From Octopus sinensis (Eukaryota), in the NCBI RefSeq assembly GCF_006345805.1, contig NC_043008.1, positions 55,056,001 through 55,120,000 on the forward strand: a DNA stretch of 64,000 nt, read 5' to 3'. The notes under the pieces are model-generated. The model ran no database searches. It was not told the origin of the DNA and saw only the letters and a list, made by a program, of their open reading frames with translations. How positions within the stretch are numbered: the stretch's first letter is position 1; each line of letters starts with the position of its first letter. Positions 15,601 through 54,918 of this stretch are shown here, piece after piece. The translations under genes were made by a program, and so were the position numbers.

Positions 15601-18600
15601 GACAGTACTCTCTCTTTCGGATAATCGACTTCGTTGATCTGCTATAGTACTGGGAATACTTTCTCTTTCAGATATTTCGGTCCGACGGTCGGTTATTGAG
15701 CTGGGAATACTCATTATTCCTGATATCTGACTTCGCTGATCTGATATCGATCTGACAGTACTCTCTCTTTCGGATAATCGACTTCGTTGATCTGCTATAG
15801 TACTGGGAATACTTTCTCTTTCAGATATTTCGGTCCGACGGTCGGTTATTGAGCTGGGAATACTCATTATTCCTGATATCTGACTTCGCTGATCTGATAT
15901 CGATCTGACAGTACTCTCTCTTTCGGGTAATCGACTTCGTTGATCCATAATTGTACTGGGAATACTTTCTCTTTCAGATATTTCGGTCCGACGGTCTGTT
16001 AGTGAACTGGGAATACTCATCGTCCCCGATATCTGACTTCGCTGATCTGATATCGATCTGACAGTACTCTCTCTTTCGGATAATCGACTTAGTTGATCAA
16101 TTATTGTACTGGGAATACTTTCTCTTTCAGATACTTCACTCCTGCGGTCTGTTATTGAACTGGGAATACTCATCGTTCCCGATATCTTAGTTCGCTCGTC
16201 AGATATCGATCTGATAGTACTCTCTCTTTCGGATAATCGACTTCGTTGATCTGCTAATTTACTCTGAATACTTTCTCTTTCAGATTCTTCACTACGACGG
16301 TCTGTTATTGAGCTAGGAATACTCATTGTACCCGATATCTGACTTCGCTGATCTGATATCGATCTAATAGTACTCTCTCTTTCGGATAATCGACTTAGTT
16401 GATCAGCTATTGTACTGGGAATACTCTCTCTTTCAGATATTTGACTTCGCCGATCTGTTATTGAACTGGGGATACTCATCGTTCCTGATATCTGACTTCG
16501 CTCATCTGACATTGATCTGATAGTACTTTCTCTTTCTGATAGTCGACTTCGTTGATCTGCTAATGAGCTTGGAATACTCTCTCTTTCGGATACTTCACTC
16601 CGCCGGTCTGTTATTGAACTGGGAATACTCATTCTTCCAGGTATTTCACTTCGCTGGTCTGGTGTCGATCTGAAAGAACTCTCTCTTTCTGATGATAGAC
16701 TTCTCTGGGTTTCTATTGTACTGGGAATGCTCTCCCTTGTATATACTTCACTCCGACGGTCCATTATTGAGCTTGGTATACTCATTGTATCTGATATCTG
16801 ACTTCGCAGATCTGATATCGATCTGATAGTACTCTCTGTCTCTGATAATCGACTCCGTTCGTCTGGGATTTTACTGGAAATACTCTCTCTTTCAGATACT
16901 TCACTCAGCCGGTCTGTTATTGAACTTGGAATACTCATTATTCCACTTATCTGACTTCGCTGATCGTATATGGACCTTACAATGCTCTCCGTTTCTTGTA
17001 ATCGACTACGCTGTTCTGGTGTCATACTAAAAATTCTATGTCTTTCAGATATTTCACTCCGCCAGTCTGTTGTTGAAATTGGAAAATACGTTTTTTCAGA
17101 TATCTCACTTCGCTGATCGTATGTCGACCTAACCATGCTCTCCCTCTCTGGCAATCGACTTCGTTGGTCTGGCATCCAACTTAAGACACTCTTTCTTTGA
17201 GTTACTTGGCTTGGCCAGTCTCTTATTGAACTGGGAATACTCGTTGTTCCAGAAATCTGACTTCGTTCGTCTGATATCGATCTTATAGTACTCTCTCTTT
17301 CTGATGATCGACGTTGCTCGTCTGATATTGTACTGGGAGTACTCTCTCTTTCGGATACTTCACTTAGTCGCTCCGTTACTGAACTGACGGGGATACTCAT
17401 CGTTCCTGATATCTGACTTCGCTCATCAGATATCGATCTGATAGTGCTCTCTCTTTCGGATAATCGACTTCGCTGATCTGCTATTGTACTGGGAGTACTC
17501 CGTCTTTCAGATACTTCACTTAGTCGCTCCGTTACTGAACTGGGGGGGATACTCATCGTTCCTGATATCTGACTTCGCTCATCATATATCGATCTGAGAG
17601 TACTCTCTCTTTCGGATAATCGACTTCGCTGATCTGCTATTGTACTGGGAGTACTCCGTCTTTCAGATACTTCACTTAGTCGCTCCGTTACTGAACTGGG
17701 GGGGATACTCATCGTTCCTGATATCTGACTTCGCTCATCATATATCGATCTGAGAGTACTCTCTCTTTCTGATAATCGACTTCGCTGATCTGCTATTGTA
17801 CTGGGAGTACTCCGTCTTTCAGAAACTTCACTTAGTTGCTCCGTTACTGAACTGGCGGGGATACTCATCGTTCCTGATATCTGACTTCGCTGATCTGTTA
17901 TCGATCTGATAGTACTCTCTCTTTCGGATAATCGACTTCGCTCATCTACTTTTGTACTGGGAATACTCTCTCTTTCAGATATTTGACTCCGCCGATCTGT
18001 TATTGAACTGGGGATACTCATCGTTCCTGATATCTGACTTCGCTCATCAGATATCGATCTGATAGTGCTCTCTCTTTCGGATAATCGACTTCGCTGATCT
18101 GCTATTGTACTGGGGGTACTCCGTCTTTCAGATACTTCACTTAGTCGCTCCGTTACTGAACTGGGGGGGATACTCATCGTTCCCGATATCTGACTTCGCT
18201 GATCTGTTATCGATCTGATAGTACTCTCTCTTTCTGATAATCGACTTCGTTGATCTGCTATTGTACTGGGAGTACTCCGTCTTTCAGATACTTCACTCCG
18301 ACGGTCCGTGACCGAACTTGGGGGGATTCTCATCGTTCCCGATATCTGACTTCGCTCATCTGATATCGATCTGAGAGTACTCTCTCTTTCGGATAATCGA
18401 CTTCGCTGGTCTGCTATTGTACTGGGAGTACTCCGTCTTTCAGAAACTTCACTTAGTCGCTCTGTTACTGAACTGGCGGGGGTACTCATCGTTCCCGATA
18501 TCTGACTTCGCTCATCTGATATCGATCTGATAGTGCTCTCTCTTTCTGATAATCGACTTCGCTGATCTGCTATTGTACTGGGAGTACTCCGTCTTTCAGA

Positions 18601-21600
18601 CACTTCACTTAGTCGCTCCGTTACTGAACTGGGCGGGATACTCATCGTTCCCGATATCTGACTTCGCTGATCTGATATCGATCTGACAGTACTCTCTCTT
18701 TTTGATGATCGACTTCTTTGATCTGTTTTTGTACTGGGAATACTCTCTCTTCCAGATATTTGACTCCGCCGATCCGTTATTGAACTGGAGATACTCATCT
18801 TTCCCGATATCCGACTTCGCGCATCTGATATCGATCTGACAATACTCTCTCTTTCTGTTAATCGACTTCGCTGATCTGCTATTGTACTGGGAGTACTCCG
18901 TCTTCCAGATACTTCAGTTAGTCGCTCCGTTACTGAACTGGGGGGGATACTCATAGTTCCTGATATCTGACTCCGCTCATCAGATATCGAGCTGATAGTG
19001 TTCTCTCTTTCTGATAATCGACTTCCTTGATCTGCTTTTGTACTGGGAATACTTTCAGATATTTGACTCCATGGTTCCGTTATTATACTGGGAATACTCA
19101 TTGTTCCTGATATCTGACTTTGCTGATCTGGTATCGATTTGACAATACTCTCTCTTTCGTATAATCGACTTCGTTGATCTGCTATAGTACTAGGAATACC
19201 CTCTCTTTCAGACATTTCGGTCCGACGGTCCGTTATTGAACTGGGAATACTCTTTGTTCCCGATATCTGACTTCGCTGATCTGATATCGATTTGATAGTA
19301 CTCTCTCTTTCTGATAGTCGACTTCGTTGCTCTTGTATTGTACTAGGAATACTCTCTCTTTGATATATCTCACTTCGTTGTTCTGTAATACCTTCCTTTT
19401 CTGAAATCTGACTCCGTCGGTCATGTGTTGAACTAACTGTACTTTCACTTCCAGATATTTGACTTCTTTGTGCTATCGCTGAACTTGGTTTGCTCTCCCT
19501 TTGTGACATCTGACTCTTTTGGTCAACCTTTGGGCTTGGTGTTCTCTTTTTTACACTTATTCGACTCCGCCGGTCTGATTTCGTAGTTGTAGTACTGTCA
19601 CTCCTAGAAATTGGACTTCGTTTGTCTGTTATCGAACTAGGAGTACTCTTTCTTCCCAATATCTTTTTCCGTTGTTCACTTACCGAACTAGGAGTACTCT
19701 TTCTGCTAGATACCTGACTCCGCTTGTCACTAATTGAACTAGGCGTACTAGTACCATCTCTCACGGATCTCTGACTCCGCTGGTCAGTTGCTGAGCGAGA
19801 AGCACTCCTTGATGAGCTAGGACTACTCCTTATTTTGTCAGTTATTGTACTAGGAGTACTCTCTTTTCCAGATATTTGACTACGTTTATCCGGCATATAT
19901 CTAGGAGTAGTCTCTCTTGATGATGTCTGACTTCGTTGGTCTACCATTGAACCAGCGATACTTTCTTTTCCTGATATCTTGCTCTGCTGCTCTGTAACAA
20001 CACTGGGTGTACTTTCTCTTCCATATATAAGACTCTCTTTTTCAGTTATTGTACTATGAGTACTCTCTTTTCCAGATATCTTGCTTCGTTGGTCAATTAT
20101 AGATGTAGGTGTTCTCTGTCTTCCGGATATTTGACTCCGTTGGTCAATTATGGAACTCGGAGTACTTTCCCTTCCAGATATCTGACTACTTTGGTCAATT
20201 ATTGATGTAGGCGTTCTCTGTTTTCCAGATATCTGACTCCGCTGATCTGCAACAGAACTGCGAGAACTCTCACTAAGGAAACTATGGCTTAGATGGGATG
20301 GTACTGCACTGTGAATACTTTCCCTTCCTGAAATCTGACTTTGTTTTATTGTTGAACTCGGAACACTTTCGCTTGGTGGTGTTCGACTCAGCTGGTCTGT
20401 TGCAGAGCTAGTATAACTTTCACTCTCATGCATCTGACTTCGCTGATATGGAACCGAACTAATTATACTCTCTCTTTCTGGTGATAAGATTGGTTGCTCT
20501 GATATAGAACTAGGAGTGCTTGCTCTTGGCGATATTTCACTTTGTTCTCCTATTGCTGAACTAGGAATACTCTCTCGCCCAGATATTTGACTTCGCTGGT
20601 CTGCGATTGAACTTCGAATTCTCTCTCGTACAGTAATTTGACTCTGCTGGTCGGCTACTGAACTGAGACTACTCTCTTTTTCTGACAATTGTACTTGTTG
20701 GTCAGCTATTGAACTAGGAGTACTCTCTCTTCCATATATCTGACTCCTCTGGTCAGCTACCGGACTGAGAATACTCTCTTTTTCTGATAACAGACTCTGC
20801 TCAGATGGCTTTGAAATGGCAATACTCTCTCGTCCTGACAACAGGCTTCGTTGATCTAGAACTGAACTGGGAATGCGACTCCGCTGATCTAGCAAACTAA
20901 GAACACTCTCTCTTCGTGATAATGGACTTCGTTGATCTGTTATTGAACTGAGAATGCTATCCTTTTTGTATACTTCACTCAGTCTGTCTGCCACTAGACT
21001 ATGTGCACTTTCTCTTGTGGACAACTTATCTAGATCTTCTGGTATCGAACTGTGTTTACTCTTTTGCCCAGTTAAAGAAATTGACCGTTCTCTCTCTAAA
21101 CCAAGCAATTCTCTCTCAGACATTTGTCTCTCAGTATCTGTGTAATACGGAGTCTGTATATCCAACAGTGATTTACTCTTTCTTTCTTCACTTAGCAGAT
21201 GCCTACTTTCTCTTGATAAGCTTCCTCTTATACTGTCAATCATCTGACCGCGTGTTTCAATGCCATACTTTGCTAATAAATCGTCTAAACTCTTTTTCTT
21301 TTCTCTTAGATCTAACAGATCTGTTACTGGCATGTATGGTTTTGTCTCTATGTCTGATTGTTGATCTCTGTCTCTCATTTCCAGATGTGACCTTTCTTGT
21401 GGGGATATACTGCTATATTGTTCTGTGACCGGAGGAGAAATTTCGGTAACTGTTGACGTTTGATCTGGCTGTTCTTGGAATGAAACAGCGTGAAGCTTTT
21501 CAGCAGATGGAATACTCGTTGTTACCGGTATCTGACTTCGTTCATCTGATATCGATCTGATAGTACCCTCTCTTTCGGATAATCGACTGGGAATACTTTC

Positions 21601-24600
21601 TCTTTCAGATATTTCGGTCCGACGGTCCATTATTGAACTGGGAATACTCATTGTTACCGGTATCTGACTTCGCTCATCTGATATCGATCTGATAGTGCCC
21701 TCTCTTTCTGATAATCGACTTCGTTGATCAGCTATTGTACTGGGAATACTCTCTCTTTCATATACTTCACGCCGCTGGTCCGTTATGGAACGCGGAACAC
21801 TCATTGTTTCAGATATCCGACTTCGCTGTTCTGTTATCGACCCGATAGCACCCTCTCTTTCAACAGATGGTTGACTTACTTGGTCTGTTAACAGGCTATA
21901 CACTTCCGATATATTATGCCGCGTGTCTCTCACTGTATCATACAGCATTGAAGCCTGCCTTTCAGGTGATGGAATATGCAGTTCTTCAAATACACCTCTT
22001 GAATCATATGTTGGTAGAGTTTCTTTGACATCCCCTATGTAAGTTTCACTTGGCCGTTGTTCAAAGGAACTCTCCACTGTATCTTTTCTGGATATTTGAC
22101 TTCGATGATCAACTGAAGAAGATCTCTTTCTCATACTTATTGGTTTTTGATCGTACATTGGTGAAGTCGGTGTTGTTATGTCATCTGGTGGTATAAAACT
22201 AACATCTACTTTTTTCGGTGCAAATATAGGTGTATCAAAAAAGGATACTCGATAGTGTCCCTTTTTCGATTGTTTTCTCTGTTGCGCTGCTATTGAAGTG
22301 GTTACTTTGTCTTTTTCAGATAATTTCCCATCTGAGTGCAGTTTGTACAGAGTATCTTTTACAGGAAATTGAGTCTCTGGCTCTACCATCGATTTGTACT
22401 TTCGTTCTTGTGTGGGTAACACGTCAAGTTGTTGACGTAATGGCGATTTTTCAAACTCGAAACAAGGTGCTGAAGCCGTGGAAGTCGACTGTTGAACTCC
22501 AGTAATGCGCTGCATCGTTTCCTCAGAAATTCTACTCGGCTGTCCCATGAAAATATCTTGAATCTCTTGGGTAGATAGTGGACTCATCTCTTCTTCTAAG
22601 GAGACAACTTGCATATCTTCACTACGCTGTCTACTTCGTAATTGTTCTAAGGAGATATGCTGCGTTTCCTTTCTAGACAATTGACTCGGCTCTTGTTCTA
22701 ACGAAGATGTTTGCTTCTGCTCGAAAATTGGTTCAATTGGCGGTTGTTCTAAGGAAATAACCATAGATATCGGACTTCGTTGTTGTTCTCTGGAGAAATG
22801 CTGAAAGCCATCGGAAGATCGTCGAACGAACTGTTGATCAAATGCAACGTCCGATGGTTCTTTGGTGTATGTGGGAGATGCTGGGGGGTATAACATAGCA
22901 TCTGGGACTCCTTTCAGTGTGGCTGGCTGTTCTTTCTGATCCGGTGAAATGACTGATCTTTGTAGTATATCACTTCTTGTGATTTCACTTGGATGCATCC
23001 TGCTTGAAGTATACGGCCTTTCCGAAGTTAATGGCATTGTAGTCGATGGGTGTCTTGATGAAACATACTCCCTCTCCTGTACGGGAAACGCACTCATAGA
23101 TTTTACTAGAGGCATGCACTCAACTCCTTGAGCGGAAACATCAGAAAAGCTACCTAACTTAGCTGGTGATGCTCTACCTCTCTCTTCACCTAACGGTCCA
23201 ACTGGCACTTCTCTGGATTCTTTACTCGATGACACCCGTGATTTTCCTTTGAATCCAAAACGCCGTTTACCTTCTTTGCTGCTGCACACTTGTTCTTCAA
23301 AATCTGCCTCTGTCCAGGAAACACGTGGTGTGCTCCGTTTTGGTTTTGACAGCTTTTTTTTAAAGATGCTGGTCTTAGACGGCTTTTTCCCAACTTCTCT
23401 ACAGGAAATATCACTCATATATTCACTCATTTCAATTTCAGAGAGAGTTGTTGCGTCTACATTGCCACGCTCAATCCTTCTTTTGTCAGTATCCTCTGGT
23501 GGCTTCTCTTGAGGAACATCGAGAATTAATTCTGATAGTGGAAACTGAATTATACCTTTCATAGATTCACTGGTTGGTTGGCATGGAGGCTCAAACGATG
23601 ATGAACTAGTCTCGTGTCCTATAGAAGTACTATACGTCTGTCGTTTTGTCGATTTAGTCAACGGAAATGTTGATAATCTATCCCTCTTACCTTTCTGACT
23701 TTCTAGACTTTCTGATGACGTAGAATCCTTGTCAGTTCTCATGATATTAGCAAGCATGCTTTTAAATTTAGTCTTTGATCGATAGTCTTCTGAAGATTGT
23801 TTCTGTGATTTTTTCGACGGTTTGCAAATCGAATCTTCCCGACGTTTTGGTCTGCATACTCTTTTCCCATATTCATTTAATATAGCACTCCGTTTTTCTT
23901 CGATATGATCTGGCAATTCGGAGTGATCTGATGATGAATAATGACATGTTGTTTTTCGTAAAGATTCGTGCAAACTACGCTCTTCGTCACCTTCGTGAAT
24001 CAGTTGGATATTTGTTTCTAATTTATTCCACATTATATCTGATTTCTTTTTATTTATATATTTTCGTACTAAAAGCCAATGAATGCCAATAAATGGCAAA
24101 TAAAAGAAAAAAAAGAAATTCATAATCCCCATTTGCTTTTGTGACAGAGCACGCACTCTTCGCTTCGTTTTGGGGTGCATTGGGTAACCGTCTTTATTAT
24201 ATTTTACAGCTTTATATTGAAGATCTTTATCGAAATATTTACACTGATAGTTGCTTTTTATAAAAACACACAGCCCTGCTTCGCCAATAGATACCGGAAA
24301 ACAAAATCCAAAAATGAGTTTTAACATATTAAGTATCATAAGAAAAAGTAAAACTATACCGAAAATAACTAATGTTTCGTCTCGGAAAATAGCCGTGACC
24401 GGAGAATGGATCATTTTAGCTTTTTTCACTTCACACGGATATGGTGGATCACAACTACATTTACAACCAACTAGACATAAACAGAGTTTGTTTCTTTTTA
24501 AAATAAGGTATTTTGACTTAACTGTTTTCTGATCTTCATTCCATAATTCTATTACACACTGCACTGGAAATTGTAATTTGGCAGTATTTCCAGGAATAAT

Positions 24601-25953
24601 GCCTCCTTCAATAGATTCAAACTTGTGAAAAAATATCACTGTTTCTCCTTGAAATGGGGTCAACGTATAAGTCTTGAACTGTCTATCAGGTTCACAGTTT
24701 AATAATACTTTAAAGTTTCCTGTAATTAGTCCTATGTTAATTACATTTATTCCAATCTCATATTGGTGGCCACTATCTGAAAATGGGTGGCCGTACAAGG
24801 TTCCAATGGATCCTTCACTTAATAATGGAATTGCAGAAGGAAGAAGATCTTTGTTAAGATTTATTATAATATCTAGCTGTGCCCGAACTGAATGCCTTTT
24901 ATTCTCTACAAATAACAACGATTTATTTGATACCCAACCGGGAACTTTTCCAGTATAAGGAGCCATTGGCTTGGTAAAATGCGATAGGAAATATTTTGAT
25001 CTGTCTGACTCCACATTATTGTTCAATTTCTTCAAATTATCTTCAAGCCAGAAACTCAATGGTTGATTCTTGAAACAAGTTTTGACAAAGGATTTTGTAC
25101 AACGGTCGGTCTTTTTCAAAACGGCGCCGGCAACAATTCCTATTGCTCCACAAGATGTTCCTTTTAAATCAAAATATTTTTTCTTAATAAGCAAGTACTC
25201 ATTAACACCTTTTATGTCCGTTTTTGCCTGTGGATTTCTATTGTTTAGGGCCGAGTTTGCAACGGGTATCAATAAATAATTTAAATTTGAACAAATTATC
25301 TGTCTACAACTAAAGTTGGTCTGGTGAAGAACGCGGGCCGTGAAATAAAGGTCGTCGTCTCTCTTCTCGATAGTTTTGCCGTTGACAAGAAAACGATTGC
25401 TTTGTGCGACACTTTGCACTACTTTTACAGCGTGTTTTTCTTTTCTAAAGACCTCTACCATAAGACTTTGAATAATTATAGGGTTGCCGAGAGTATTAAC
25501 AGAATACCATAAAGGATCATATAGAATACAATGCATCTGGAGACTTTCAGGACAGCAGTATCCTTTTGTTTTGTACGACTTACCACCTACATCGGACTGT
25601 TGGCAGAAAGTTCCGGCACTTTTATAATCACCATCACAGGTTTGGTTGTAAGTCATTTCGTATGGTTGATTGTTGACAAATTGCAAAAATTGGAGGGGAT
25701 AACCAACAAGTAAATCGCTGAAGTAAACGCGCAGAGTTACTGAATCTTCGAAAAAAAAAATTTTGTTTGTGGCTAAATCAATCATGGTTTCAACTGTGTA
25801 GAAACGACCTAATTTCCAGTCGTTGTAATTATGTATATCTGCCACAAGTTGCAGTGTTAGATACCGATGGGAATTTGAACTTCGCTGTTCCTCGTCTGAA
25901 TGTTGTAGAAGGACGGTTAAAACATATGTGCTTAGCAATGTCTGTAGCTTCAT
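3673..25953 (-). CDS. HAP2: Giant intronless HAP2/GCS1-like fusexin with a ~6800-aa repetitive Ser/Arg/Glu tail (7426 aa)
   Basis: The ORF track starts at a TTG (26130); the first in-frame ATG is at 25953, giving MKLQTLLSTYVLTVLLQHS, a plausible signal peptide. HAP2 hallmarks: YPLQFLQFVNNQPYE..C..C..GYCC..HC..YDPLWY; HAP2-GCS1 (PF10699)-like motif YLLIKKKYFDLKGTSCGAIGIV..RC..CFKNQPLSFWLED (~25039-25197); Ig-like domain III ending in CLCLVGCKCSC; hydrophobic anchors at ~24298-24375 and ~24067-24132. The frame is open for 22281 nt. Confidence 0.88.
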   Translation of the reverse strand: MKLQTLLSTYVLTVLLQHSDEEQRSSNSHRYLTLQLVADIHNYNDWKLGRFYTVETMIDLATNKIFFFEDSVTLRVYFSDLLVGYPLQFLQFVNNQPYEMTYNQTCDGDYKSAGTFCQQSDVGGKSYKTKGYCCPESLQMHCILYDPLWYSVNTLGNPIIIQSLMVEVFRKEKHAVKVVQSVAQSNRFLVNGKTIEKRDDDLYFTARVLHQTNFSCRQIICSNLNYLLIPVANSALNNRNPQAKTDIKGVNEYLLIKKKYFDLKGTSCGAIGIVAGAVLKKTDRCTKSFVKTCFKNQPLSFWLEDNLKKLNNNVESDRSKYFLSHFTKPMAPYTGKVPGWVSNKSLLFVENKRHSVRAQLDIIINLNKDLLPSAIPLLSEGSIGTLYGHPFSDSGHQYEIGINVINIGLITGNFKVLLNCEPDRQFKTYTLTPFQGETVIFFHKFESIEGGIIPGNTAKLQFPVQCVIELWNEDQKTVKSKYLILKRNKLCLCLVGCKCSCDPPYPCEVKKAKMIHSPVTAIFRDETLVIFGIVLLFLMILNMLKLIFGFCFPVSIGEAGLCVFIKSNYQCKYFDKDLQYKAVKYNKDGYPMHPKTKRRVRALSQKQMGIMNFFFFFYLPFIGIHWLLVRKYINKKKSDIMWNKLETNIQLIHEGDEERSLHESLRKTTCHYSSSDHSELPDHIEEKRSAILNEYGKRVCRPKRREDSICKPSKKSQKQSSEDYRSKTKFKSMLANIMRTDKDSTSSESLESQKGKRDRLSTFPLTKSTKRQTYSTSIGHETSSSSFEPPCQPTSESMKGIIQFPLSELILDVPQEKPPEDTDKRRIERGNVDATTLSEIEMSEYMSDISCREVGKKPSKTSIFKKKLSKPKRSTPRVSWTEADFEEQVCSSKEGKRRFGFKGKSRVSSSKESREVPVGPLGEERGRASPAKLGSFSDVSAQGVECMPLVKSMSAFPVQEREYVSSRHPSTTMPLTSERPYTSSRMHPSEITRSDILQRSVISPDQKEQPATLKGVPDAMLYPPASPTYTKEPSDVAFDQQFVRRSSDGFQHFSREQQRSPISMVISLEQPPIEPIFEQKQTSSLEQEPSQLSRKETQHISLEQLRSRQRSEDMQVVSLEEEMSPLSTQEIQDIFMGQPSRISEETMQRITGVQQSTSTASAPCFEFEKSPLRQQLDVLPTQERKYKSMVEPETQFPVKDTLYKLHSDGKLSEKDKVTTSIAAQQRKQSKKGHYRVSFFDTPIFAPKKVDVSFIPPDDITTPTSPMYDQKPISMRKRSSSVDHRSQISRKDTVESSFEQRPSETYIGDVKETLPTYDSRGVFEELHIPSPERQASMLYDTVRDTRHNISEVYSLLTDQVSQPSVEREGAIGSITEQRSRISETMSVPRSITDQRREVYERESIPSTIADQRSRLSEREGTIRSISDERSQIPVTMSIPSSIMDRRTEISERESIPSRLSEREGTIRSISDERSQIPVTTSIPSAEKLHAVSFQEQPDQTSTVTEISPPVTEQYSSISPQERSHLEMRDRDQQSDIETKPYMPVTDLLDLREKKKSLDDLLAKYGIETRGQMIDSIRGSLSRESRHLLSEERKSKSLLDIQTPYYTDTERQMSERELLGLERERSISLTGQKSKHSSIPEDLDKLSTRESAHSLVADRLSEVYKKDSILSSITDQRSPLSRRESVLSLLDQRSRIPSSVLDQRSLLSGRESIAISKPSEQSLLSEKESILSPVADQRSQIYGRESTPSSIADQQVQLSEKESSLSSVADQQSQITVRERIRSSIADQRSQISGRESIPSSAIGEQSEISPRASTPSSISEQPILSPERESIISSVPYQRSQMHESESYTSSATDQLSRTPPSESVPSSTIKQSQISGRESIHSAVPSHLSHSFLSESSRSSVADQRSQISGKQRTPTSIIDQSSQISGRESTPSSIIDQRSQISGRQRTPTSIIDQRSKISGKESTHSTITEKESLIYGRESTPSVVTEQQSKISGKESIAGSMVDQRSQTSSRETTPRYMPDKRSQISGKESTPSTITDKIRSSPSSSRSASRSATDQRSQRSVRDGTSTPSSISDKRSQVSSRKSTPSSVSEQRKKILGRKSTPSSITDKRSPISRSDSTTTTKSDRRSRISVKKRTPSPKVDQKSQMSQRESKPSSAIAQRSQISGSESTVSSTHDRRSQISEKEGITEQRSEIYQRESIPSTIQEQRSRLSERESTIKSISDQRSQISGTKSIPSSITDRRTEMSEREGIPSTIADQRSRLYERESIVKSIPDQQSQISGTMSIPSIITEPWSQISESIPSTKADQGSRLSERENTISSISDERSQISGTMSIPPSSVTERLTEVSGRRSTPSTIADQRSRLTERESIVRSISDARSRISGKMSISSSITDRRSQISGRESIPSTKTDQRSRSSKRESTVRSISDQRSQISGTMSIPPSSVTERLSEVSERRSTPSTIADQRSRLSERESTIRSISDERSQISGTMSTPASSVTERLSEVSERRSTPSTIADQRSRLSERESTLRSISDERSQISGTMRIPPSSVTDRRSEVSERRSTPSTIADQRSRLSERESTIRSITDQRSQISGTMSIPPSSVTERLSEVSERRSTPSTIADQRSRLSERESTIRSISDERSQISGTMSIPSSITDRRSQISERESIPSTKVDERSRLSERESTIRSITDQRSQISGTMSIPASSVTEQLSEVSERRSTPSTIADQRSRLSERESTLRSIYDERSQISGTMSIPPSSVTERLSEVSERRSTPSTIADQRSRLSERESTLRSIYDERSQISGTMSIPPSSVTERLSEVSERRSTPSTIADQRSRLSERESTIRSISDERSQISGTMSIPVSSVTERLSEVSERESTPSTISDEQRRSSERESTIRSISDERSQISGTTSIPSSIRDWPSQVTQRKSVLSWMPDQRSRLPERESMVRSTYDQRSEISEKTYFPISTTDWRSEISERHRIFSMTPEQRSRLQETESIVRSIYDQRSQISGIMSIPSSITDRLSEVSERESISSKIPDERSRLSETESTIRSISDLRSQISDTMSIPSSIMDRRSEVYTRESIPSTIETQRSLSSERESSFRSTPDQRSEIPGRMSIPSSITDRRSEVSERESIPSSLADQRSRLSERESTIRSMSDERSQISGTMSIPSSITDRRSQISERESIPSTIADQLSRLSERESTIRSISDQRSQISGTMSIPSSITDRRSEESERESIQSKLADQRSRLSERESTIRSISDERTKISGTMSIPSSITDRRSEVSERESIPSTIIDQLSRLSERESTVRSISDQRSQISGTMSIPSSLTDRRTEISERESIPSTIMDQRSRLPERESTVRSISDQRSQISGIMSIPSSITDRRTEISERESIPSTIADQRSRLSERESTVRSISDQRSQISGIMSIPSSITDRRTEISERESIPSTIADQRSRLSERESTVRSISDGRSQISGTMSIPSSITDRRTEISERESIPSTIADQRSRLSERESTVRSISDQRSQISGTMSIPISVTDRKSEVTERESIPSTIADQRSRLSERESTIRSISDGRSQISGTMSIPSSITDRRTEISERESIPSTMTDQRSRLSERESTVRSISDQRSQISGTMSIPSSITDRRSEVSERESIPSTIADQRSRLSERESTIRSISDQRSQISGTMSIPSSITDRRTEISERESIPSTIADQRSRLSERESTIRPTSDGPSQISGMISIPSSITDRRSEVSERESIPSTIADQRSRLSERESTVRSISDEQIQISGMTSIPSSITDRRSEVSERGSIPSTMTDQRSRLSERESRIRSISDGRSQISGTMSIPSSITDRRSEIFERESYPSTVADQRSRLSERESTVRSISDDRSQISGTMSIPSSITYHRSEVSERESIPSTMTDQRSRLSERESRIRSISDGRSQISKTMSIPSSITDRRSEIFESESYPSTIADQRSRLSERESTIRSISDERSKISGTMSIPSSVTDRRSEVTERESIPSTIADQRSRLSERESTIRSISDRPSQISGTMSIPSSIIDRRSEVSERESIPSTIADQLSRLSERESTIRSISDQRSQISGTMSIPSSITDRRSEISERESIPSTIADQLSRLSERESTIRSISDGRSQISETMSIPSSVTDRRSEVSERESIPSTIADQRSRLSERESTIRSISEGRSQISGTMSIPRSITDRRSEVSERESTPSTISDERSRLSERESTIRSASVEESKTSEQISLPSSRTDRGSEISERESVPSTIIHQGSRLSESESTFRSKSDLQSQISAAESIPSSIRSGSGVVSERAGIVRFLPDQRRRLSERETPVRSIADQRSQIFARLHIPSSVSEWQSEASEREISPRAISDERSRLSERESTISSIPDERSQIAETASVPSSVMEVRSEVYERARIVSTIPDQQSRLSERESIIRSIYDQRSRISRTMSTPSSISDRLSEIFERESIPSKIEDQRSRLSEGEGTIRSISGPRSQISGTLSIPSSIIDRRSAVSERESMTRTMTEPTSRLSGTESTITSISGPRSQISGTMSIPSSIIDRRSAVSERKSTPSTMTEQRSQLTGSESTITSISGPRSQISGTMSIPSSMTDRRTEMSERESIPSSMTDQRSRLSERESTVRSISDQRSQISGTMSIPSSITDRRTEISERESIPSSMTDQRSRLSERESTIRSISDGRSQILGTMSIPSSITDRRTEISERESIPSSMTDQRSRLSERESTIRSISDGRSQISGTMSIPSSITDRRTEISERESIPSTMTDQRSRLSERESTIRSISDGRSQISGTMSIPSSITDRRTEISERESIPSTMTDQRSRLSERESTIRSISDGRSQISGTMSIPSSITDRRTEISERESIPSSMTDQRSRLSERESTIRSISDGRSQISGTMSIPSSITDRRTEMSVRESIPSTMTDQRSRLSERESTIRSISDQRSQISGTMSIPSSMTDRRTEMSVRESIPSTMTDQRSRLSERESTIRSISDGRSQISGTMSIPSSITDRRTEISERESIPSSMTDQRSRLSERESTIRSISDGRSQISGTLSIPSSITDRRTEISERESIPSSMTDQRSRLSERESTIRSITDQRSQISGTMSIPSSITDRRTEISERESIPSTMTDQRSRLSERESTIRSISDGRSQISGTLSIPSSITDRRSEVSERESIPSTMKDQRSRLSERESTIRSISDQRSQISGTMSIPSSITDRRTEISERESIPSTIADQRSRLSERESTIRSISDGRSQISGTMSIPSSITDRRTEISERESIPSTMTDQRSRLSERESTIRSISDQRSQISGTMSIPSSIKDRLSEVSERKSIPSTMMDQRSRLSERESIVRSISDAQSQLSGTLSIPSSITDRRSEVSERERIPSTMTDQRSRLSERESTIRSISDGRSQISGTMSIPSSITDRRTEISERESIPSTMTYPRSRLSERGSTVRSISEGRSQIAETMSIPSSITDRRSEVSERESIPSTMTDQRSRLSERESTVRSIADQRSQISGTMSIPSSITDRRSEVSERESIPSTIADQRSRLSERDSTIRSISDDRSYTSGTMSTPSSMTDRRSEVWMPDHRSRLSERESTVSSISDGRSEMSRTRSVRSSTSSRRSDVTERESVPSTFTEQRSRLSERESTIGLTSDDRSQISGSMSISTSEADRRSDVTDKESIPSIIAAHRSRLSEKEVTQSPVSDIQSPISEREKIHSLTPEKWSQISERERMEVSTADQRSATPSKRTIRSSIADIRSQISRSMRSLISPLDKRSRISEKESIPTSIAHQLSQLSGKENILSSPPVEVSHVSERESIPSLMRDQRSQISGRESILSSMADQRSISSGRERIHSSKEEQPSSITRIQSISREMGDQHSQITGQDSRVSLRHSTLSRSDSNLSSVQDQESHISEPPSIRSSLSEELSQISGKHSRVSTVPEQWSKPSRTESLRISVPDEQISGRESIQSPLSLQRSEIFERERMHSNVLSQRSRDDESASFKTFIPEQGSRITERESIVRSIPDQRSRLYETVSTERPFSEERQLSKSDISVQSGPDERSYTSRREIIRSLTTEPSIISGREGIPGSMIDRRSQISGKESTLSSMTDQRSLTSGRESTPSSMTDRRSQISGRESIPSTMRDRRSQISGRESIPSSMRDERSQISGRESIPSSMRDERSQISGRESIPSSMRDERSRISERESIPSSMRDERSQISGRESIPSSMRDERSQISGRESIPSSMTDRRSQISGRESTPSSMRDERSQISGRESTRSSMRDERSQISGRESTRSSMRDERSQISGRESTPSSMRDERSQISGRESIPSSMRDERSQISGRESTRSSMRDERSQISGRESTPSSMRDERSQISGRESIPSSMRDERSQISGRESTRSSMRDERSQISGRESIPSSMRDERSQISGRESTRSSMRDERSHISGRESIPSSMRDERSQISGRESTRSSMRDERSQISGRESIPSSMRDERSQISGRESIPSSMRDERSQISGRESIPSSMRDERSQISGRESIPSSMRDERSQISGRESTRSSMRDERSQISGRESIPSSMRDQRSQISGRESIPSSMRDQRSQISGRESIPSSEQHSHVSERDSIFSSTPEQRTQTSRSESSLSSIVDQPSEASVSECMLQSTPDEQLQISRGESARTSIPNQRSQISDRWNTFSSMQDQENQVFHRESILGSVPEQWSQVFLRRESIQRSEPNQRSQISESENIRQTIAPHLTYISARESTPSLIVELGSHISDRASIHSSTSDQRSQITGKESFVSSLPDQGSQISEKERIFTPVTDQRRQVSERESSFSSVPGHRSQVFQGESVPSSVADQMSQKSGSEIVYTPVSNEWRQLSRNESIVGSTPFQRSQISGRESIPGSMMDQRSQISGKVSTPTSIRDQRSQISGRESIPGSVTDQRSQIFEREGTSSSMTDQRSQISGRESTPSSMRDQRSQISGRVSTPSSTTDQRSHLSGRESIPGSMMEQRSQISGREGTPSSMRDERSQISGRESTPGTMTGQQSEISGREGSPSSMREQQSQISSRENIPSSATSRSTSHRPLSEISSGRSIRQDTNTSVGEVLDELSRSSRTQSSLADFPAGIQPRDSYVVSSQQSRYESDVALTETSNESSRSQATTVIRNESDSARALSKSSSSHSSQTSRSSSSDKISTNSNALRSTLDKSQNNNISVKKYVGKTAKKFDKPGTSQKKKSTNLNSKNFLGNRKKNQIDSSQNADQDRSDDLMDKSENTSSYAADGFPMKQAQKKDRTQKSQGRENICEGEYVCEEKTESGLDNNSSNNKAVASTSRFCKDTIKVCSESAQGMQSSTTDKEYVNKLVKSEKVYYNFPESSRNLINSGDKFSLYGALRKDGNRYVFRLMQFLEQTYENIDGIARPLQGRKILISNSYVFNRYLDCSGVLSFITKKPKYPCLNNPD
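6210..7740 (-). repeat. Homogeneous coding tandem array, 51-bp unit (SGRESIPSSMRDERSQI), about 30 copies
   Basis: The 17-aa unit can be read directly in the translation, with near-identical DNA units. Confidence 0.95.
9230..19370 (-). repeat. Coding higher-order array, 153-bp unit (3 x 51 bp) with a 156-bp variant block at ~17300-18960
   Basis: Unit SERESTIRSISDQRSQI-SGTMSIPSSITDRRTEI-SERESIPSTIADQRSRL. The variant adds one codon (IPPSS/IPASS/IPVSS). Degenerate zones lie at ~12230-13300 and ~16650-17300. Confidence 0.95.
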
Positions 25954-26372
25954 AATTCCACCATAATTAATGAAATTTAAATCGTCAACAATATTTGATT
26001 GGATGAGCGAGACAGAGGAATATAGAAAAATACAACATGAAGAAATATATAATTGTATATATACCGAATTATGCAAATAAGCACACGAGAAATGAAAACC
26101 AAAAAGCTTACTGATTTTATATATCTTCAAAAAGCGGGATTCTTATCTATTATGTTCATTTTAATATCCATCCTTCATGAAAATGTCAGACAGTTGGCAA
26201 TATCGCGTTTGTTTAGCGTCATTCTTTTTGAAACAACCTATTTCTTCTCAACGCTGTTACTTTGAATTTGACTCCCTGTTGATAAAGATCGGTTCTGATT
26301 AAATGTACACCATGGATTATTATTACTGATTTCAACATCGGTGGGGTAGATACCGGAAAGGAGTCATTAGTT
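25887..26372. repeat. 5' flank and signal-peptide tract nearly identical to 46049-46535
   Basis: By-eye alignment gives about 11 differences in ~490 bp. Confidence 0.9.
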
Positions 26373-26639
26373 GTAACTCATTTATTTTACTAATTTATGT
26401 TCTCCTACACATGGTAATATTTATGACTACTGTGCGTGCGCGTAATCACGTGACTGTGTGTGTGCGTGTGACAATGAATAAATTATCCAATCTATTTATA
26501 GTTAAATCCATTTAATTGTATATATTGTATATCATCCGACGATTAAAATCATTGATGATCTATCTGTCAGTATTTTTGCTCAGTAAAGGAATTCCTCATA
26601 AAACTTTACAGATACGGCACGCATAAATCCCGGCTTTCA

Positions 26640-29814: not shown

Positions 29815-29885
<71 letters not shown>

Positions 29886-38592: not shown

Positions 38593-38659
<67 letters not shown>

Positions 38660-42808: not shown

Positions 42809-43719
42809 CATACATACTTTCGAATGTAATCAGCAGACTTATTGATGTATAAAATTCAAAAATTTATTTATTGTATTCCTTGTCTACTTTTAAATGTACT
42901 ATATACATGTATGTATGAGTGTGCACGTATGTATATGTGTGAAAACACTTGGTCACTATTTTATCATTTATGTTTTATCCTTAAAGAAGAAAATGTAATA
43001 AGGACAGGTAAAAATGTGCTTAGTATTCAACAATTTATTGGAAATGCAACATTGTTTTACTGCAGTCTACCTAAAAACGTCGGAAAATAATCTTTTCACG
43101 AATTTTTTCCTTTGAAAAAATAAAAATACTTAACCATGGTAATTTGATACGCATTAATATATTCTTCTTTCGTTGCCTTTGCCTGTAACTGTCTATAGTT
43201 ATGAAGTTCGTTAGGATCGATATTCATCACAAATAGTTTAAATTTCGTATTCGAGAAACATAACATAAAATTATTTTACAGTCACTCCTTTAATTTGTGG
43301 TACATTTCATCGACTCAGCTTCGTCTTCTTTGTATGCCCGCTTGTTGATCTACATTAAGAATGTCCTGAGAGTTAGTCCTTTCGAATAGGATTCAAATAA
43401 ATCGTGAACATCTATATCGTCTATTTTTACGAAACCAAGCTTTATTCCAATGTTAAGTATTTCTTCAAAAAAATTCCTCTGTTAGTGTGTCATTGAAATA
43501 TTAAGCACACTGAAATCAAATATGTTGGTTTTCACATTTCCCCACGATTCAAGAATATTTTAAATGGCGTTTTTTTAAAAATATATTAAACAGGTTCACA
43601 AATTCTACCAATGAACAATGGTAAAATATGTTGCAGTTTGTCACTTTCCCCCAAGATTTACAAATATTTTTAATGGCAACTTTTATATTAAACTGTTTCA
43701 CAAATTCTGCCAATGAAAT

Positions 43720-46115
43720 TCAAGAACATTTATCTTTTTTAGGAGTTCTCTTGAATGATGAACATGAAGAAGGCTCAGATGAACTACTCTCGTGACCGTC
43801 GCGAATAGTTTGGGTAATATCAGGTATGATACATGCTGAAAGATTATCCGTAATACTTTTCTGACAGTCTGAACTTTCACATGAACTAGGTTCTTTCTCT
43901 GTTTTTCGAAAATTATTAAACACGCATTTCAATTTACTCTTTCGTTGGCAATCCTTAGATAATTTCGGAGACTTTTCGCACGGGTGTTTCACTGACTCCT
44001 CACCACATTTCCCTTTATATATTCTTCTACCATATTCCTCTAATATAGAATTCCTTTCTTCTTGGACGGGGTCTGGCAATTCGGACTGATCTGATGATAT
44101 TGTTTGACATGATGCTCTTTTCAAAGCACGGTGCAAACAAAAGTTGTCATCGCCTTCTTTGACCATTTCAACAGTTGTTTCTAACTTGTCCCACGTTATA
44201 TCCTTTTTCTTTTTATTTATCTTGTTTCGTGCTAAAAACCAATGAAAGACAATAAATGGCAAGTAAAAGAAGAATAATAAATTCAGAGCACCCATTGTCT
44301 TGTACTGCAAAGCACGCACTCTTTCTTTAGTTTTCGGATGCACTGGGTAACCGTCTTCATCGTACTCTACTGCTTTTTGCTGAAGATCTTTTTCGAGATA
44401 TTCACACTGAAAGCTACTTGTTATAAAAACACATAGCCCTGCTTCGCCAACGGGAATTGGGAAGCAAAAGCCAAAAGAGAATTTTAGTAAATTGAGTAGC
44501 ATAAGTAGAAATAAAATTGTGCACACAATAACCCAGAGTTTCTCATGAGGAAAGTCTTTGACAGGAGATTCAGTGGTGGTTCTCTTGTCTATCATTTCGC
44601 ATGTATATGGTTGATCACAAATACATTTACAACCGACTAAACATATGCATATTTTGCTTTCTTCTAAAATAATTTCTTTTGATTGCGTTGTTTTCTCATC
44701 TTCATTCAACAATTCTATTCGACACAGCGATGGTAACAGTTTTTTATTGGTGTTTTTAGAGGTAGTGTTCGCGCTTTCTTTTTCAATAGTTAATTCAATA
44801 TTCTGATAAAATCTCACTATTTGTCCTTGAAATGGCATCAATATTAAAGTCTTGAACTGATTTTTCGGTTCACAGTTTAATGATATTTTAAAGCTTCCTG
44901 TAACTAGCCCTATGTTAAGAATACTTACTCCAATCTCATACTGGGTGTCATAATTTGTAAATGGATGGCTGTATATAGTTCTGATAGAACCTTTACCTAT
45001 TAATGGAATTGCAAAAGGAAAAAGGTTTTTATTGAGATTTATAATAATTTCCAGCTTCGCTTTATCTGAACGCTTTGGATTAGCTACAAATAACAATGTC
45101 GTACTAGATTTCCAGCCAGGAATTTTCCCAATATAAGGGGCTACAGGTAAGGCAAACCTCGATAGAAAATATTTTGATTTCTTTATATTGCCACCGCTGA
45201 TTTTTATCTCCTCATTTTTGTCATACTGAGTTTTGGAGCAATCTTTTACAAAGGTGTCTGAACATCTGTCGCTCTTTCTTGTAACAGAACCGATAGATAT
45301 TCCAGTTGTAGCGCACACTATTCCTTTTATATCAAAATCTTTCTTCTTAATAAGCAAGTATTCACGAACACCTTCCAATATCTGTAGACTGACGTTTGAT
45401 GGCATTCTTGAAAGAGGTACCAATAAATAATTAACTTTGGACAAAATGGGTTTTTACAAGCAGAAGAAGTAGTGTTAGCCAGATTATGAACGCGGGCCGT
45501 GAAATAAAGTTTATCGTCTTCCTTCTCGATAGTTTTGCCGTTGACAAGAAAACGATTGCTTTCGGCGATTTTTTTCTTTAGAACATCTGATTCGCCGCCT
45601 GCTTCCTTTGTGAAGACCTCCATTTTTATACCCTGAATGATTACAGGGTCGTCGAGCGTATTAATAGAATACCATAAAGGATCATAGAAAATACAACGAA
45701 TCTGAACACTTTCAGGACAACAGTACCCTTTGACCTTGTACGAATTGCTGTCTGAATTAGTCTGCTGGCAGAAATAGTCCATATTTCCATTTTTAGTACA
45801 GGTTTCGTTGAAAACTATTTCGTATGGGCGATTGTTGACAAATTGCAAAAATTGAATGGGATAACCGATCTTTGAGCTGGGAACGTAAAGGCGCAGAGTT
45901 ACTGAATCTTCGAAAAAATAAAATTTCTTGGTCGATAAATCAATCATGGTTTCAATGTTAAAAAAGCGATCCAATTTCTGCTGTTCGGGACTTTCCAGGT
46001 CTATCAGAAGTTGTACGGTCAGATACGTATCGGAATCTGAACTTAGTTGTTCTTCGTCTGAATGTTGTAGAAGGACGGTTAAAACATATGTGCTTAGCAA
46101 TGTCTGTAGCTTCAT
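43720..46115 (-). pseudogene. HAP2: Second intronless HAP2/GCS1-like paralogue with a short tail (~798 aa if repaired), one 1-bp deletion at 45431-45432; pseudogene or assembly error
   Basis: ORFs 45327..46292 and 43720..45444 are collinear with the N-terminal part of copy 1. Copy 1 reads TTA AAT TAT TTA TTG and copy 2 reads TTA AT TAT TTA TTG. ATG at 46115. No other lesion was seen. Confidence 0.8.
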
Positions 46116-47209
46116 AATTCCACCATAATTAATGAAATTTAAATCGTCAACAATATTTGATTGGATGAGCGAGACAGAGGAATATAGAAAAATATAACAT
46201 GAAGAAATATATAATTGTATATATACCGAATTATGCAAATAAGCACACGAGAAATGAAAACCAAAAAGCTTACTGATTTTATATATCTTCAAAAAGCGGG
46301 ATCTTATCTATTATGTTCATTTTAATATTCATCCTTCATGAAAATGTCAGACAGTTGGCAATATCGCGTTTGTTTAGCGTCATTCTTTTTGAAACAACTT
46401 ATTTCCTCTCAACGCTATTACTTTGAATTTGACTCCCTGTTGATAAAGATCGGTTCTGATTAAATGTACACCATGGATTAATATTACTGATTTCAACATC
46501 GGTGGAATAGATACCGGAAAGGAGTCATTAGCTGTAACTCTTTAATTTTACTATTTAAAGTTCTCTTACACATGATAATATTTACGTTTACTTCTATGCT
46601 GATATGAACGCACGTGAGTGTGTTGTTCTTCTTTAGTTCAAGGTACTGCAGACTTATGACCAAAAACATTCCAGTAATGACTAACCCCCCAACTTTTTTT
46701 GCAGTCATTATATTTAATACATACTATATTATCCTCTGTTATTTTTGATATTATCCAAGATATTATTCAAGATATTATTTGAGACATTTTCCCCGCTAAT
46801 TCTAACAGTTCATGCGAACAAACAGACGTTTTTGTTGATTCGTGTGTATGTATGTGTACGTCTGTGTGTGTGTATAACTACGAAATGAAGCTTATTCCAA
46901 TATTTTAATTCAGTACTTATACATAGCGAAAAAAAAAAAAACAAAGAAAGAAACTAAAAGCAAACATTCATGATATTCGTTAGATCAACCATTCTGTCTC
47001 ATACTGTTCTTTCCTGAGGCGCAGTGCTTTCATTCCAATTTGATGGAAGAGAATGACACTTCAAGGACAAAAGTTAGCTGCGGTTTCAACAGCTACCGAC
47101 GCAAAAAAGGAATTTGTCCTTTTATGCCCAGAACCCAATAAAGACTGCGCACATGTTGCACCTAATTAATTATTATCGAGCCCTGTTTATGTTGAAGAAC
47201 TGTATCGTT

Positions 47210-54634: not shown

Positions 54635-54696
<62 letters not shown>

Positions 54697-54865: not shown

Positions 54866-54918
<53 letters not shown>

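What the first reader, a model, noticed from the sequence alone, without database searches (positions are those of the whole stretch)
43720..46115. Long-tail and short-tail HAP2 paralogue pair; the short copy is broken by a single base
Seen: a same-strand tandem paralogue lies ~18 kb upstream. It is collinear through the ectodomain, anchors and first ~170 tail residues (GHESSSSEP versus GHETSSSSFEP) and then stops. Its only lesion is TT versus TTT at 45431-45432 in an AT-rich run. The cysteines are conserved and there are no in-frame stops despite heavy amino-acid divergence. Inference: the lesion is very recent or a homopolymer assembly error. A two-component system is plausible, with a short and a giant form that might form heterotrimers or act at different stages.
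Basis: partly seen in the sequence, partly recalled or inferred. Interest (0 to 1): 0.72.

Follow-up and report, generated by a model that had tools for sequence, protein, structure and literature searches.

The report
Octopus HAP2 duplicate with one frameshift
The common octopus carries two neighbouring copies of the ancient sperm-egg fusion gene HAP2: a giant one, and a short partial copy that selection kept readable until very recently but that this assembly shows broken by one missing base, either a very young null allele or a sequencing error.

Summary
The window is Octopus vulgaris chromosome sequence (GCA_951406725.2). It holds a giant single-exon HAP2 gene (L, 3673-25953, minus strand, 7,426 aa). 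About 17.8 kb 5' of it on the same strand lies a 2.4-kb partial duplicate (S, 43720-46115). Both match Pfam HAP2-GCS1.

S is collinear with L from about 480 bp upstream of the ATG to about 150 residues into the tail. Its only frame-breaking lesion is one missing base at 45431-45432.

S is not an old pseudogene:
- dN/dS against L is 0.57 (CI 0.46-0.69).
- It has no stop codons where 26-40 would be expected under neutrality.
- Ten of the eleven indels are multiples of three.
- All 18 ectodomain cysteines are kept.

Any neutral decay is limited to d below about 0.02-0.035.

S is not a full partner either. It lacks the repeat tail and a conserved C-terminal domain found in L and other lophotrochozoan HAP2s, it has lost ij-loop signature residues, and it evolves about 1.4 times faster than L.

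The assembly is ONT-based (QV39), so I cannot separate a real null allele (my estimate about 0.5) from a consensus error (about 0.4). The heterotrimer idea remains untested.

Both copies, and the nearest relative, lack the canonical HAP2 fusion loop.

The parts
43720..46115 (-). S: short-tail HAP2 paralogue, ATG to TGA, 2,396 nt (798 codons if the frame is bridged)
45432..46115 (-). S piece 1: signal peptide and first 228 ectodomain codons, in frame with the ATG. As read, this frame runs on to TAA at 45327-45329
   Evidence: 61% identical to L
45431..45432 (-). Frameshift site: AA on the coding strand (TT on plus) where L has AAA (TTT). The gap can be placed anywhere between the TGT codon and AAT TAT
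43720..45431 (-). S piece 2: rest of the ectodomain, membrane anchors, 169-aa Cys-rich basic tail and stop. Public gene calls hold its Met-started 561-aa ORF (P0001)
44419..44553 (-). S first hydrophobic anchor (transmembrane helix plus GEAGLCVFI segment)
   Evidence: conserved across animal HAP2
44230..44298 (-). S second hydrophobic segment, followed by the basic stretch RNKINKKKK
45217..45243 (-). S ij-loop signature degraded: DCSKTQYDK, with a 3-codon deletion that removes the conserved P and W of NQPxxxW
46040..46592 (-). S copy of the near-identical 5' tract (about 480 bp upstream plus the signal-peptide codons), 94-100% identical to L 25880-26431
25880..26431 (-). L copy of the near-identical 5' tract (putative gene-conversion tract)
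3673..25953 (-). L: giant HAP2 gene, a single 7,426-aa open frame made of ectodomain, anchors, 6,797-aa Ser/Arg-rich tail and C-terminal domain
23679..26431 (-). The part of L that is duplicated in S (block boundary by blastn)
4831..19386 (-). L tail tandem repeats (51-, 153- and 306-bp periods); absent from S
3676..4005 (-). L C-terminal conserved domain (VYYN..FSLYG..PKYPCLN); absent from S and from the rest of the window
25537..25563 (-). L GYCCPESLQ: the place where other HAP2s carry the 35-90-residue cd (fusion) loop with RGGQxC. The S equivalent is 45702-45728, GYCCPESVQ

Best explanation
S is a partial tandem duplicate of the octopus HAP2 gene. It copied the 5' flank, signal peptide, whole class II ectodomain, both membrane anchors and about 150 tail residues. 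It did not copy the repeat tail or the conserved C-terminal domain. Shown: S stayed a translated gene under purifying selection for nearly all of the time since duplication (dS about 0.6). Shown: its first 550 bp or so are now nearly identical to L. I infer that this comes from recent gene conversion, so S probably shares L's 5' regulatory sequence. Shown: S carries one 1-nt deletion that truncates the product to 228 native residues plus 34 out-of-frame residues. My commitment: the deletion is more likely real than an artefact, making S a very young and possibly still polymorphic null allele of a gene already under weakened constraint. Inferred function while intact: a membrane-anchored HAP2 ectodomain with a short, Cys-rich basic tail, made in the same cells as L, acting as an accessory or modulating subunit and not as an independent fusogen.
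For: Homology and architecture. Long-term selection rests on four results. dN/dS is 0.57 with bootstrap CI 0.46-0.69 (0 of 2,000 replicates reach 1). There are 0 stops where 26-40 would be expected if the S lineage had been neutral. Ten of 11 indels are multiples of 3. Eighteen of 18 ectodomain Cys are kept. Recency: d below 0.02-0.035 from stops alone, and below about 0.01 if further indels are counted at an assumed rate of one per ten substitutions. 5' tract: 94-100% identity over about 550 bp against about 72% elsewhere. Weakened or changed constraint on S shows in three ways. Lineage-specific changes are 68 for S versus 47 for L with P0002 as outgroup (chi2 3.8), and 44 versus 23 with Solemya (chi2 6.6). 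S has lost H141, N296, P298 and W302, which are 85-100% conserved in 68 other HAP2s and are kept by L. S has no C-terminal domain. Arguments that the deletion is real: the neighbouring 22.3-kb L frame, much of it tandem repeat, has no frame error, so the local indel accuracy is better than the genome-wide QV39. The site is unique sequence (about 75% identical to L), where short-read polishing works. The same broken reading is in public gene calls for version 2 of the assembly.
Against: The assembly is ONT R9.4.1 with Hypo polishing, QV39, which is about 0.3 expected errors per 2.4 kb at the genome-wide rate. The lesion is a 1-nt deletion in a short homopolymer in AT-rich sequence, which is the typical ONT error. 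Everything else about S looks like a working gene. No reads, transcripts or orthologous loci could be reached to decide. The accessory-subunit role is inference only.
Confidence: 0.5

Rival explanations
1. The missing base is a residual consensus error of the ONT-based assembly. S would then be an intact, expressed 798-aa short-tail HAP2 paralogue.
For: ONT R9.4.1 reads, NextDenovo assembly and Hypo polishing gave QV39. The lesion is a 1-nt deletion in AA/AAA within TTAATTATTTATT. There are no stops, all other indels are in frame, dN/dS is 0.57, and the ectodomain cysteines are intact.
Against: The adjacent 22.3-kb L frame has no frame error despite harder repeat sequence. The site is unique and only a 2-3-nt run. 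No intact 798-aa S protein appeared among representatives of about 15 billion proteins; the only S-derived hit was the 561-aa post-frameshift ORF.
Confidence: 0.4
2. S is an old, dead duplicate pseudogene drifting neutrally.
For: S is a partial duplicate without the C-terminal domain. It is frameshifted. dN/dS is fairly high at 0.57, and S evolves faster than L.
Against: There are zero stops where 26-40 would be expected. Ten of 10 other indels are multiples of three (chance at most about 2e-5 if a third of random indels are 3n). dN/dS is below 1 in all 2,000 bootstraps. All 18 ectodomain Cys are kept.
Confidence: 0.04
3. The frameshift is bypassed during expression, by a small intron, programmed -1 ribosomal frameshifting or transcriptional slippage.
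For: The open frames on both sides are conserved, and the required shift is -1.
Against: Homologous residues abut the site on both sides, leaving no spare sequence for an intron. The 9 nt available (CCA AAG TTA) hold no X XXY YYZ slippery heptamer and no long homopolymer (read directly from the sequence).
Confidence: 0.03

Closest known systems
HAP2/GCS1 gamete fusogens (Pfam PF10699; Chlamydomonas 5MF1/6DBS, Arabidopsis 5OW3, Cyanidioschyzon 7S0K)
   Same: The Pfam domain scores above the cut-off in both copies. The AlphaFold model of L (pLDDT 79) matches HAP2 structures best, with E 1e-21 to 1e-18, ahead of Fsx1, EFF-1 and viral class II proteins. There is a signal peptide and a type I anchor. 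The conserved disulfide cysteines of domains II and III are kept.
   Different: The whole cd loop is replaced by a 4-residue turn in L, S and P0002. In Chlamydomonas this loop carries the fusion loops and the Arg (R185) that is essential for fusion (PMC5332557). L has a 6,797-aa tail, whereas reviews describe HAP2 tails from almost none to 500 residues or more (PMC8777248).
Lophotrochozoan 'hapless 2-like' proteins (Pecten maximus XP_033735139.1, Solemya velum KAL5009314.1, Lineus longissimus XP_064623729.1) and P0002 (1,163 aa, unlabelled transcript-like contig)
   Same: They share the ectodomain, the double hydrophobic anchor with the conserved GxxGL...Y.E..L...V.Y...G.P.HP.T segment, and, for L only, the C-terminal VYYN..FSLCG..PxYPCLN domain.
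   Different: S lacks the C-terminal domain. Pecten, Solemya and Lineus keep the RGGQxC cd loop, while P0002, L and S do not. Identity to L is 22-35%.
HAP2 paralogue pairs in protists: Leishmania HAP2-1/HAP2-2 and Plasmodium falciparum HAP2/HAP2p
   Same: These are two HAP2-family genes in one genome with different roles or expression (PMC10630298).
   Different: Those pairs are old and very divergent (26% identity in the GCS1 domain in L. tropica) and both members are intact. Here the pair is a tandem, 54-61% identical partial duplicate in an animal, and one member is frameshifted. I found no paper on cephalopod HAP2 in the library.
Unprocessed (duplicated) pseudogene or segregating loss-of-function allele
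   Same: It is a tandem partial duplicate with a single frame-breaking indel.
   Different: There are no secondary lesions, dN/dS is clearly below 1, and the frame was preserved through ten other indels. If it is a pseudogene, it is at the very start of decay.

Membership tests
HAP2/GCS1 family (homology) | Match to Pfam PF10699 above the gathering score | tested here: met
   L scores 86.8 bits and S piece 2 scores 50.9 bits against a cut-off of 27.4. S piece 1 alone scores 22.3 bits.
HAP2/GCS1 family (homology) | Three-domain class II fusion-protein fold | tested here: met
   The L model (pLDDT 79.1) has HAP2 structures as its top Foldseek hits: 7S0K at E 1.3e-21, then 6DBS, 5OW3 and 5MF1. 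S was not modelled; the fold is inferred from 54-61% identity to L.
HAP2/GCS1 family (homology) | Type I topology: N-terminal signal peptide, ectodomain, C-terminal membrane anchor | tested here: met
   Both copies start with the hydrophobic N-terminus MKLQTLLSTYVLTVLLQ. Hydropathy segments lie at L 519-565 and 610-629 and at S 522-566 and 607-629. The hydropathy scan is crude, and the topology of the second segment is unresolved.
HAP2/GCS1 as a working fusogen | cd loop bearing hydrophobic fusion loops, organised by a conserved Arg (Chlamydomonas R185, the RGGQxC motif in animals) | tested here: not met
   The segment is absent in L, S and P0002, where GYCCP-ES(L/V)Q joins directly to HC/RC. 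It is present in the other 68 aligned HAP2s, with the Arg 96% conserved. The model shows a tight hairpin with pLDDT of 90 or more. Functional role of the loop: PMC5332557.
HAP2/GCS1 as a working fusogen | ij-loop signature of PF10699 (C-L-x-N-Q-P...W, including the conserved Gln) | tested here: inconclusive
   L keeps CFKNQPLSFW. S keeps only the Gln (CSKTQ---YD), having lost N, P and W.
HAP2/GCS1 as a working fusogen | Gamete-specific expression and a requirement for membrane merger | not testable with these tools
   No octopus transcript, proteome or genetic data were reachable.
Decaying pseudogene | Several independent disabling lesions and dN/dS about 1 | tested here: not met
   There is one lesion only, and dN/dS is 0.57 (CI 0.46-0.69). 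There are 0 stops where 26-40 would be expected, and 10 of 10 other indels are in frame.
Gene-conversion tract between tandem paralogues | A sharply bounded stretch far more similar than the synonymous divergence of the flanking sequence | tested here: met
   Identity is 94-100% in 50-bp windows from L 26356 to 25907. It drops to 56-74% downstream and 38-44% upstream, and dS elsewhere is about 0.6. Direction and date were not determined.

The most novel reading that the evidence does not exclude
Octopods run a remodelled HAP2 machine. The canonical cd fusion loop has been deleted, the main gene has acquired a tail of about 6,800 residues rich in Ser and Arg that ends in an ancestral C-terminal domain, and a co-regulated short-tail, Cys-rich paralogue without that domain is kept by selection as a second subunit. 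S would then be intact in the population, co-assemble with L, and tune or trigger membrane merger or adhesion.
Probability: 0.12. Interest if true: 0.75.

Novelty: new variant of a known kind. Interest (0 to 1): 0.45.

Why it matters
HAP2 is the only established gamete fusogen shared across eukaryotes, and its role in animals is little studied. This locus shows that an octopus keeps HAP2, in an unusual form: the canonical fusion loop is gone, there is a giant repeat tail, and there is a second, short-tailed copy that selection preserved until very recently. If S is intact in most animals, the locus offers a natural contrast of the same ectodomain with and without the tail and the C-terminal domain. 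That contrast could show what HAP2 cytoplasmic regions do. If S is truly broken, it is a gene caught at the very start of decay. In either case annotators should note that the public 561-aa gene call for S is a fragment produced by the frameshift.

Tried and rejected
- Word-indexed protein searches with the L ectodomain, with P0001 and with a four-sequence alignment found nothing beyond P0001 itself. As a result no octopod orthologues were obtained.
- An exact look-up of the 262-aa product of S piece 1 found no record.
- A scan of metagenome contigs for the frameshift site, with or without the extra base, gave 0 matches.
- Literature searches for HAP2 in octopus, cephalopods or molluscs gave no relevant paper; most 'hap2' hits meant haplotype 2. 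The run accessions of P0002 are not cited anywhere in the library.
- Rfam and tRNA scans of the window found nothing.
- The C-terminal region and proximal tail of L have no Pfam match. The model of the C-terminal domain has no significant PDB neighbour, best E 0.35.
- Uncollapsed haplotype: rejected, because identity is only 72-75%.
- An intron across the site: rejected, because homology is collinear to the base.
- Programmed frameshifting or slippage: rejected, because there is no slippery motif or long homopolymer.
- A downstream exon giving S a C-terminal domain: tblastn of the L tail and C-terminal domain against the rest of the window found nothing. Splicing from S into L itself cannot be excluded without RNA data.
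- Separate dN/dS for the S lineage: not possible. The only outgroup, P0002, is 35% identical, so I judged its synonymous sites saturated and did not attempt the estimate.

Full report
**Source of the window**

The 561-aa ORF that follows the frameshift in S exists as a public gene call, P0001. It sits on one record only: NCBI GCA_951406725.2, OX597825.1, an 89.6-Mb chromosome, with the fetched locus L001 spanning positions 71,668,459-71,676,144. That accession is the Octopus vulgaris reference xcOctVulg1. The animal was a male. [quoted passage not shown] The window looks like animal DNA. It has no tRNA or Rfam hits, a 1.46-kb (CATA)n array, and many interspersed repeat copies.

**Checking the observation**

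- L: On the minus strand there is one giant open frame, 3673-26130. From its ATG at 25953 it encodes 7,426 aa.
- S: S runs from ATG 46115 to TGA 43720 and is 2,396 nt, one base short of a multiple of three. It appears as two overlapping ORFs.
- Family: Both genes match Pfam HAP2-GCS1. L scores 86.8 bits, and the S pieces score 50.9 and 22.3 bits, against a cut-off of 27.4.
- Duplicated block: A self-comparison of the window shows one duplicated block, L 23679-26431 = S 43845-46592, 75% identical. Everything else shared between the two halves of the window is dispersed repeat.
- The lesion: Nucleotide alignment places a single 1-nt gap at 45431-45432, TT on the plus strand where L has TTT. The residues on either side are homologous to L and to the outgroup P0002: CPKL|NYLLVP in S, CSNLNYLLIP in L, and ESNYLLIP in P0002.

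**Evidence that S was a working gene until very recently**

- Selection: Over 751 aligned codons outside the 5' tract, dN is 0.347, dS is 0.613 and dN/dS is 0.57. The bootstrap 95% interval is 0.46-0.69, and none of 2,000 replicates reaches 1.
- Stop codons: From the codon content of S, 90-134 stop-creating changes are expected per unit of neutral divergence. Neutral evolution of the S lineage (about 0.3) would therefore give 26-40 stops, and there are none. Zero stops bound the neutral divergence since loss of constraint to below 0.022-0.034.
- Indels: Of the eleven indels that separate the two coding sequences, ten are multiples of three.
- Cysteines: All 18 ectodomain cysteines of L are kept in S despite about 40-46% amino-acid divergence.

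An old pseudogene is therefore excluded.

**Evidence that S is not an equal partner of L**

- Missing C-terminal domain: The homology stops about 150 residues after the second anchor, and S then reads about 20 unrelated codons to a stop. L continues through 6,797 tail residues (24% Ser, built of 51/153/306-bp repeats). It ends in a domain of about 100 residues, VYYN..FSL(C/Y)G..PxYPCLN. That domain is shared with P0002 and with HAP2-like proteins of Solemya, Pecten and Lineus, in 12 of 138 collected proteins. It folds confidently (pLDDT 84) but has no Pfam or PDB match. No trace of it or of the repeats lies near S. The shared domain marks L as the copy with the ancestral architecture and S as a truncated derivative.
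- Faster evolution: With P0002 as outgroup, S has 68 lineage-specific replacements and L has 47 (chi2 3.8). With Solemya the counts are 44 and 23 (chi2 6.6). Three more distant outgroups show no difference.
- Lost signature residues: There are 112 columns conserved at 70% or more in 68 non-cephalopod HAP2s. In these, S alone has lost the invariant His of SAHC (H141R), and N296, P298 and W302 of the NQP..W ij-loop signature. Fedry et al. show that this signature underpins the membrane-interacting tip (PMC5332557).
- Cys-rich tail: The short S tail has 11 Cys in 169 residues, where the equivalent stretch of L has 4. Six of them are Ser in L and Cys in S. This could reflect a new role, for example acylation as proposed for Cys-rich basic HAP2 tails (PMC8777248). 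That is inference.

**The 5' tract**

From about 480 bp upstream of the ATG through the signal-peptide codons, L 26431-25880 and S 46592-46040 are 94-100% identical in 50-bp windows. Identity then falls abruptly to 56-74% inside the gene and to about 40% further upstream. With dS about 0.6 elsewhere, the simplest reading is recent gene conversion. S would then carry essentially L's 5' regulatory sequence and signal peptide. That fits co-expression but does not prove it.

**Is the frameshift real or an error?**

This cannot be settled from one assembly.

For an error:
- The reads are ONT R9.4.1, and QV39 means about 0.3 errors per 2.4 kb at the genome-wide rate.
- A 1-nt deletion in a short homopolymer in AT-rich sequence is a typical ONT error (this last point rests on my own knowledge).

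For a real lesion:
- The neighbouring L frame runs 22.3 kb without a single frame error, much of it through tandem repeats about 85% identical to one another.
- The site is unique sequence and the run is only 2-3 nt.
- S shows signs of weakened constraint.
- The search of representatives of about 15 billion proteins returned only the broken 561-aa product, not an intact 798-aa S.

I put a real, very young and possibly heterozygous null allele at about 0.5 and a consensus error at about 0.4. An intron is excluded because homology is collinear to the base. Recoding is unlikely because the 9 nt available hold no slippery heptamer or long run.

**What the proteins are**

An AlphaFold model of L residues 1-700, built on 72 aligned HAP2s, has a mean pLDDT of 79. 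Its best structural matches are HAP2 from Cyanidioschyzon, Chlamydomonas and Arabidopsis (E 1e-21 to 1e-18), followed by archaeal Fsx1, EFF-1 and viral class II proteins. Homology to HAP2 is therefore secure.

One functional hallmark is missing. In Chlamydomonas HAP2 the cd loop at the tip of domain II carries the two fusion loops. It also carries R185, whose removal or neutralisation abolishes fusion (PMC5332557). In animal HAP2s this is the GFCCxC...RGGQxC...SAHCL segment. L, S and P0002 go straight from GYCCP (GFCCP in P0002) to ES(L/V)Q-HC, whereas all 68 other aligned proteins keep the segment. The model shows a tight two-strand hairpin there, with pLDDT of 90 or more.

These proteins are therefore HAP2 homologues. 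Whether they still insert into a target membrane in the canonical way is open. I file them as a variant, not as standard members.

**Comparison with what is known**

HAP2 paralogue pairs are described in Leishmania (HAP2-1/HAP2-2) and Plasmodium falciparum (HAP2/HAP2p) (PMC10630298). Cytoplasmic tails are known to range from almost none to 500 residues or more (PMC8777248). 'Hapless 2-like' proteins are annotated in bivalves and a nemertean. I found no paper on cephalopod HAP2 in the searchable library. The tandem long/short pair, the loss of the cd loop and the 6.8-k-residue tail are therefore, as far as I could check, undescribed variants of a known family. A lone frameshift in a duplicate is an ordinary event.

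**Verdict**

The finding is real and correctly described. The 'two-component, heterotrimer' idea is possible but unsupported. It is weakened by the truncation of S, the loss of tip-signature residues and the faster rate. It is helped only by long-term purifying selection and the shared 5' tract. The decisive data are reads at the site, orthologous loci in other octopods and gonad transcriptomes, all of which lie outside this toolset.

Noticed in passing
window 25537-25563 (L) and 45702-45728 (S); also P0002: Both octopus HAP2 copies and the closest relative lack the entire cd loop, which in other HAP2s carries the fusion loops and the essential conserved Arg (RGGQxC). Sixty-eight other aligned HAP2s keep it. 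The AlphaFold model shows a tight hairpin in its place.
   Followed up: partly
window 3676-4005 (-): A conserved C-terminal domain of about 100 aa (VYYN..FSLCG..PxYPCLN) ends L. It also ends 12 of 138 HAP2-like proteins (Solemya, Pecten, Lineus, P0002 and others). The fold is predicted confidently (pLDDT 84), but there is no Pfam or PDB match. S lacks it.
   Followed up: partly
window 3673-24066 (-), repeats 4831-19386: The L cytoplasmic tail is 6,797 aa and 24% Ser. It is built from 51-, 153- and 306-bp tandem repeats (units such as RSQISGRESIPSSMRDE) and is uninterrupted by any stop or frameshift. It is far longer than the HAP2 tails described in the review I read.
   Followed up: partly
window 43720-44229 (-): The 169-aa S tail holds 11 cysteines, where the equivalent stretch of L holds 4. 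Six are Ser in L and Cys in S. This looks like a directional change, possibly creating acylation or metal-binding sites, and not like drift.
   Followed up: no
window 24067-24399 (L) and 44230-44553 (S): After the transmembrane helix there is a conserved GEAGLCVFI segment, a conserved hydrophilic stretch of about 45 aa (Y.E..L...V.Y...G.P.HP.T..RVR) and a second hydrophobic helix. The module is shared with bivalve, nemertean and insect HAP2s. Its topology is unclear.
   Followed up: no
window 25880-26431 and 46040-46592: A tract of about 550 bp that is 94-100% identical covers the 5' flank and signal peptide of both genes and has sharp edges. It probably reflects recent gene conversion. The direction is unknown.
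   Followed up: partly
window 27305-28761: A 1.46-kb (CATA)n microsatellite with about 372 copies lies just 5' of L. It produces spurious ORFs in all six frames.
   Followed up: no
window 38631-39410; 29584-30064, 31035-31462, 48890-49286, 54467-55142, 62508-63883 and others: There is a 377-bp unit duplicated in tandem at 99% identity. Several families of interspersed, SINE-like repeats of about 200-450 bp fill the intergenic space at 82-95% identity.
   Followed up: no
window 43400-43720 (-), just 3' of the S stop: Two tandem copies of a unit of about 95 bp (CATTGG.AGAATTTGTGAA...CAACATATTT) follow the S stop codon, close to the 3' edge of the duplicated block.
   Followed up: no
L001 / P0001: The public gene call for S is a 561-aa protein that starts at an internal Met just after the frameshift. 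It has no signal peptide and lacks the first 240 or so residues, so it is an annotation artefact of the frameshift.
   Followed up: yes
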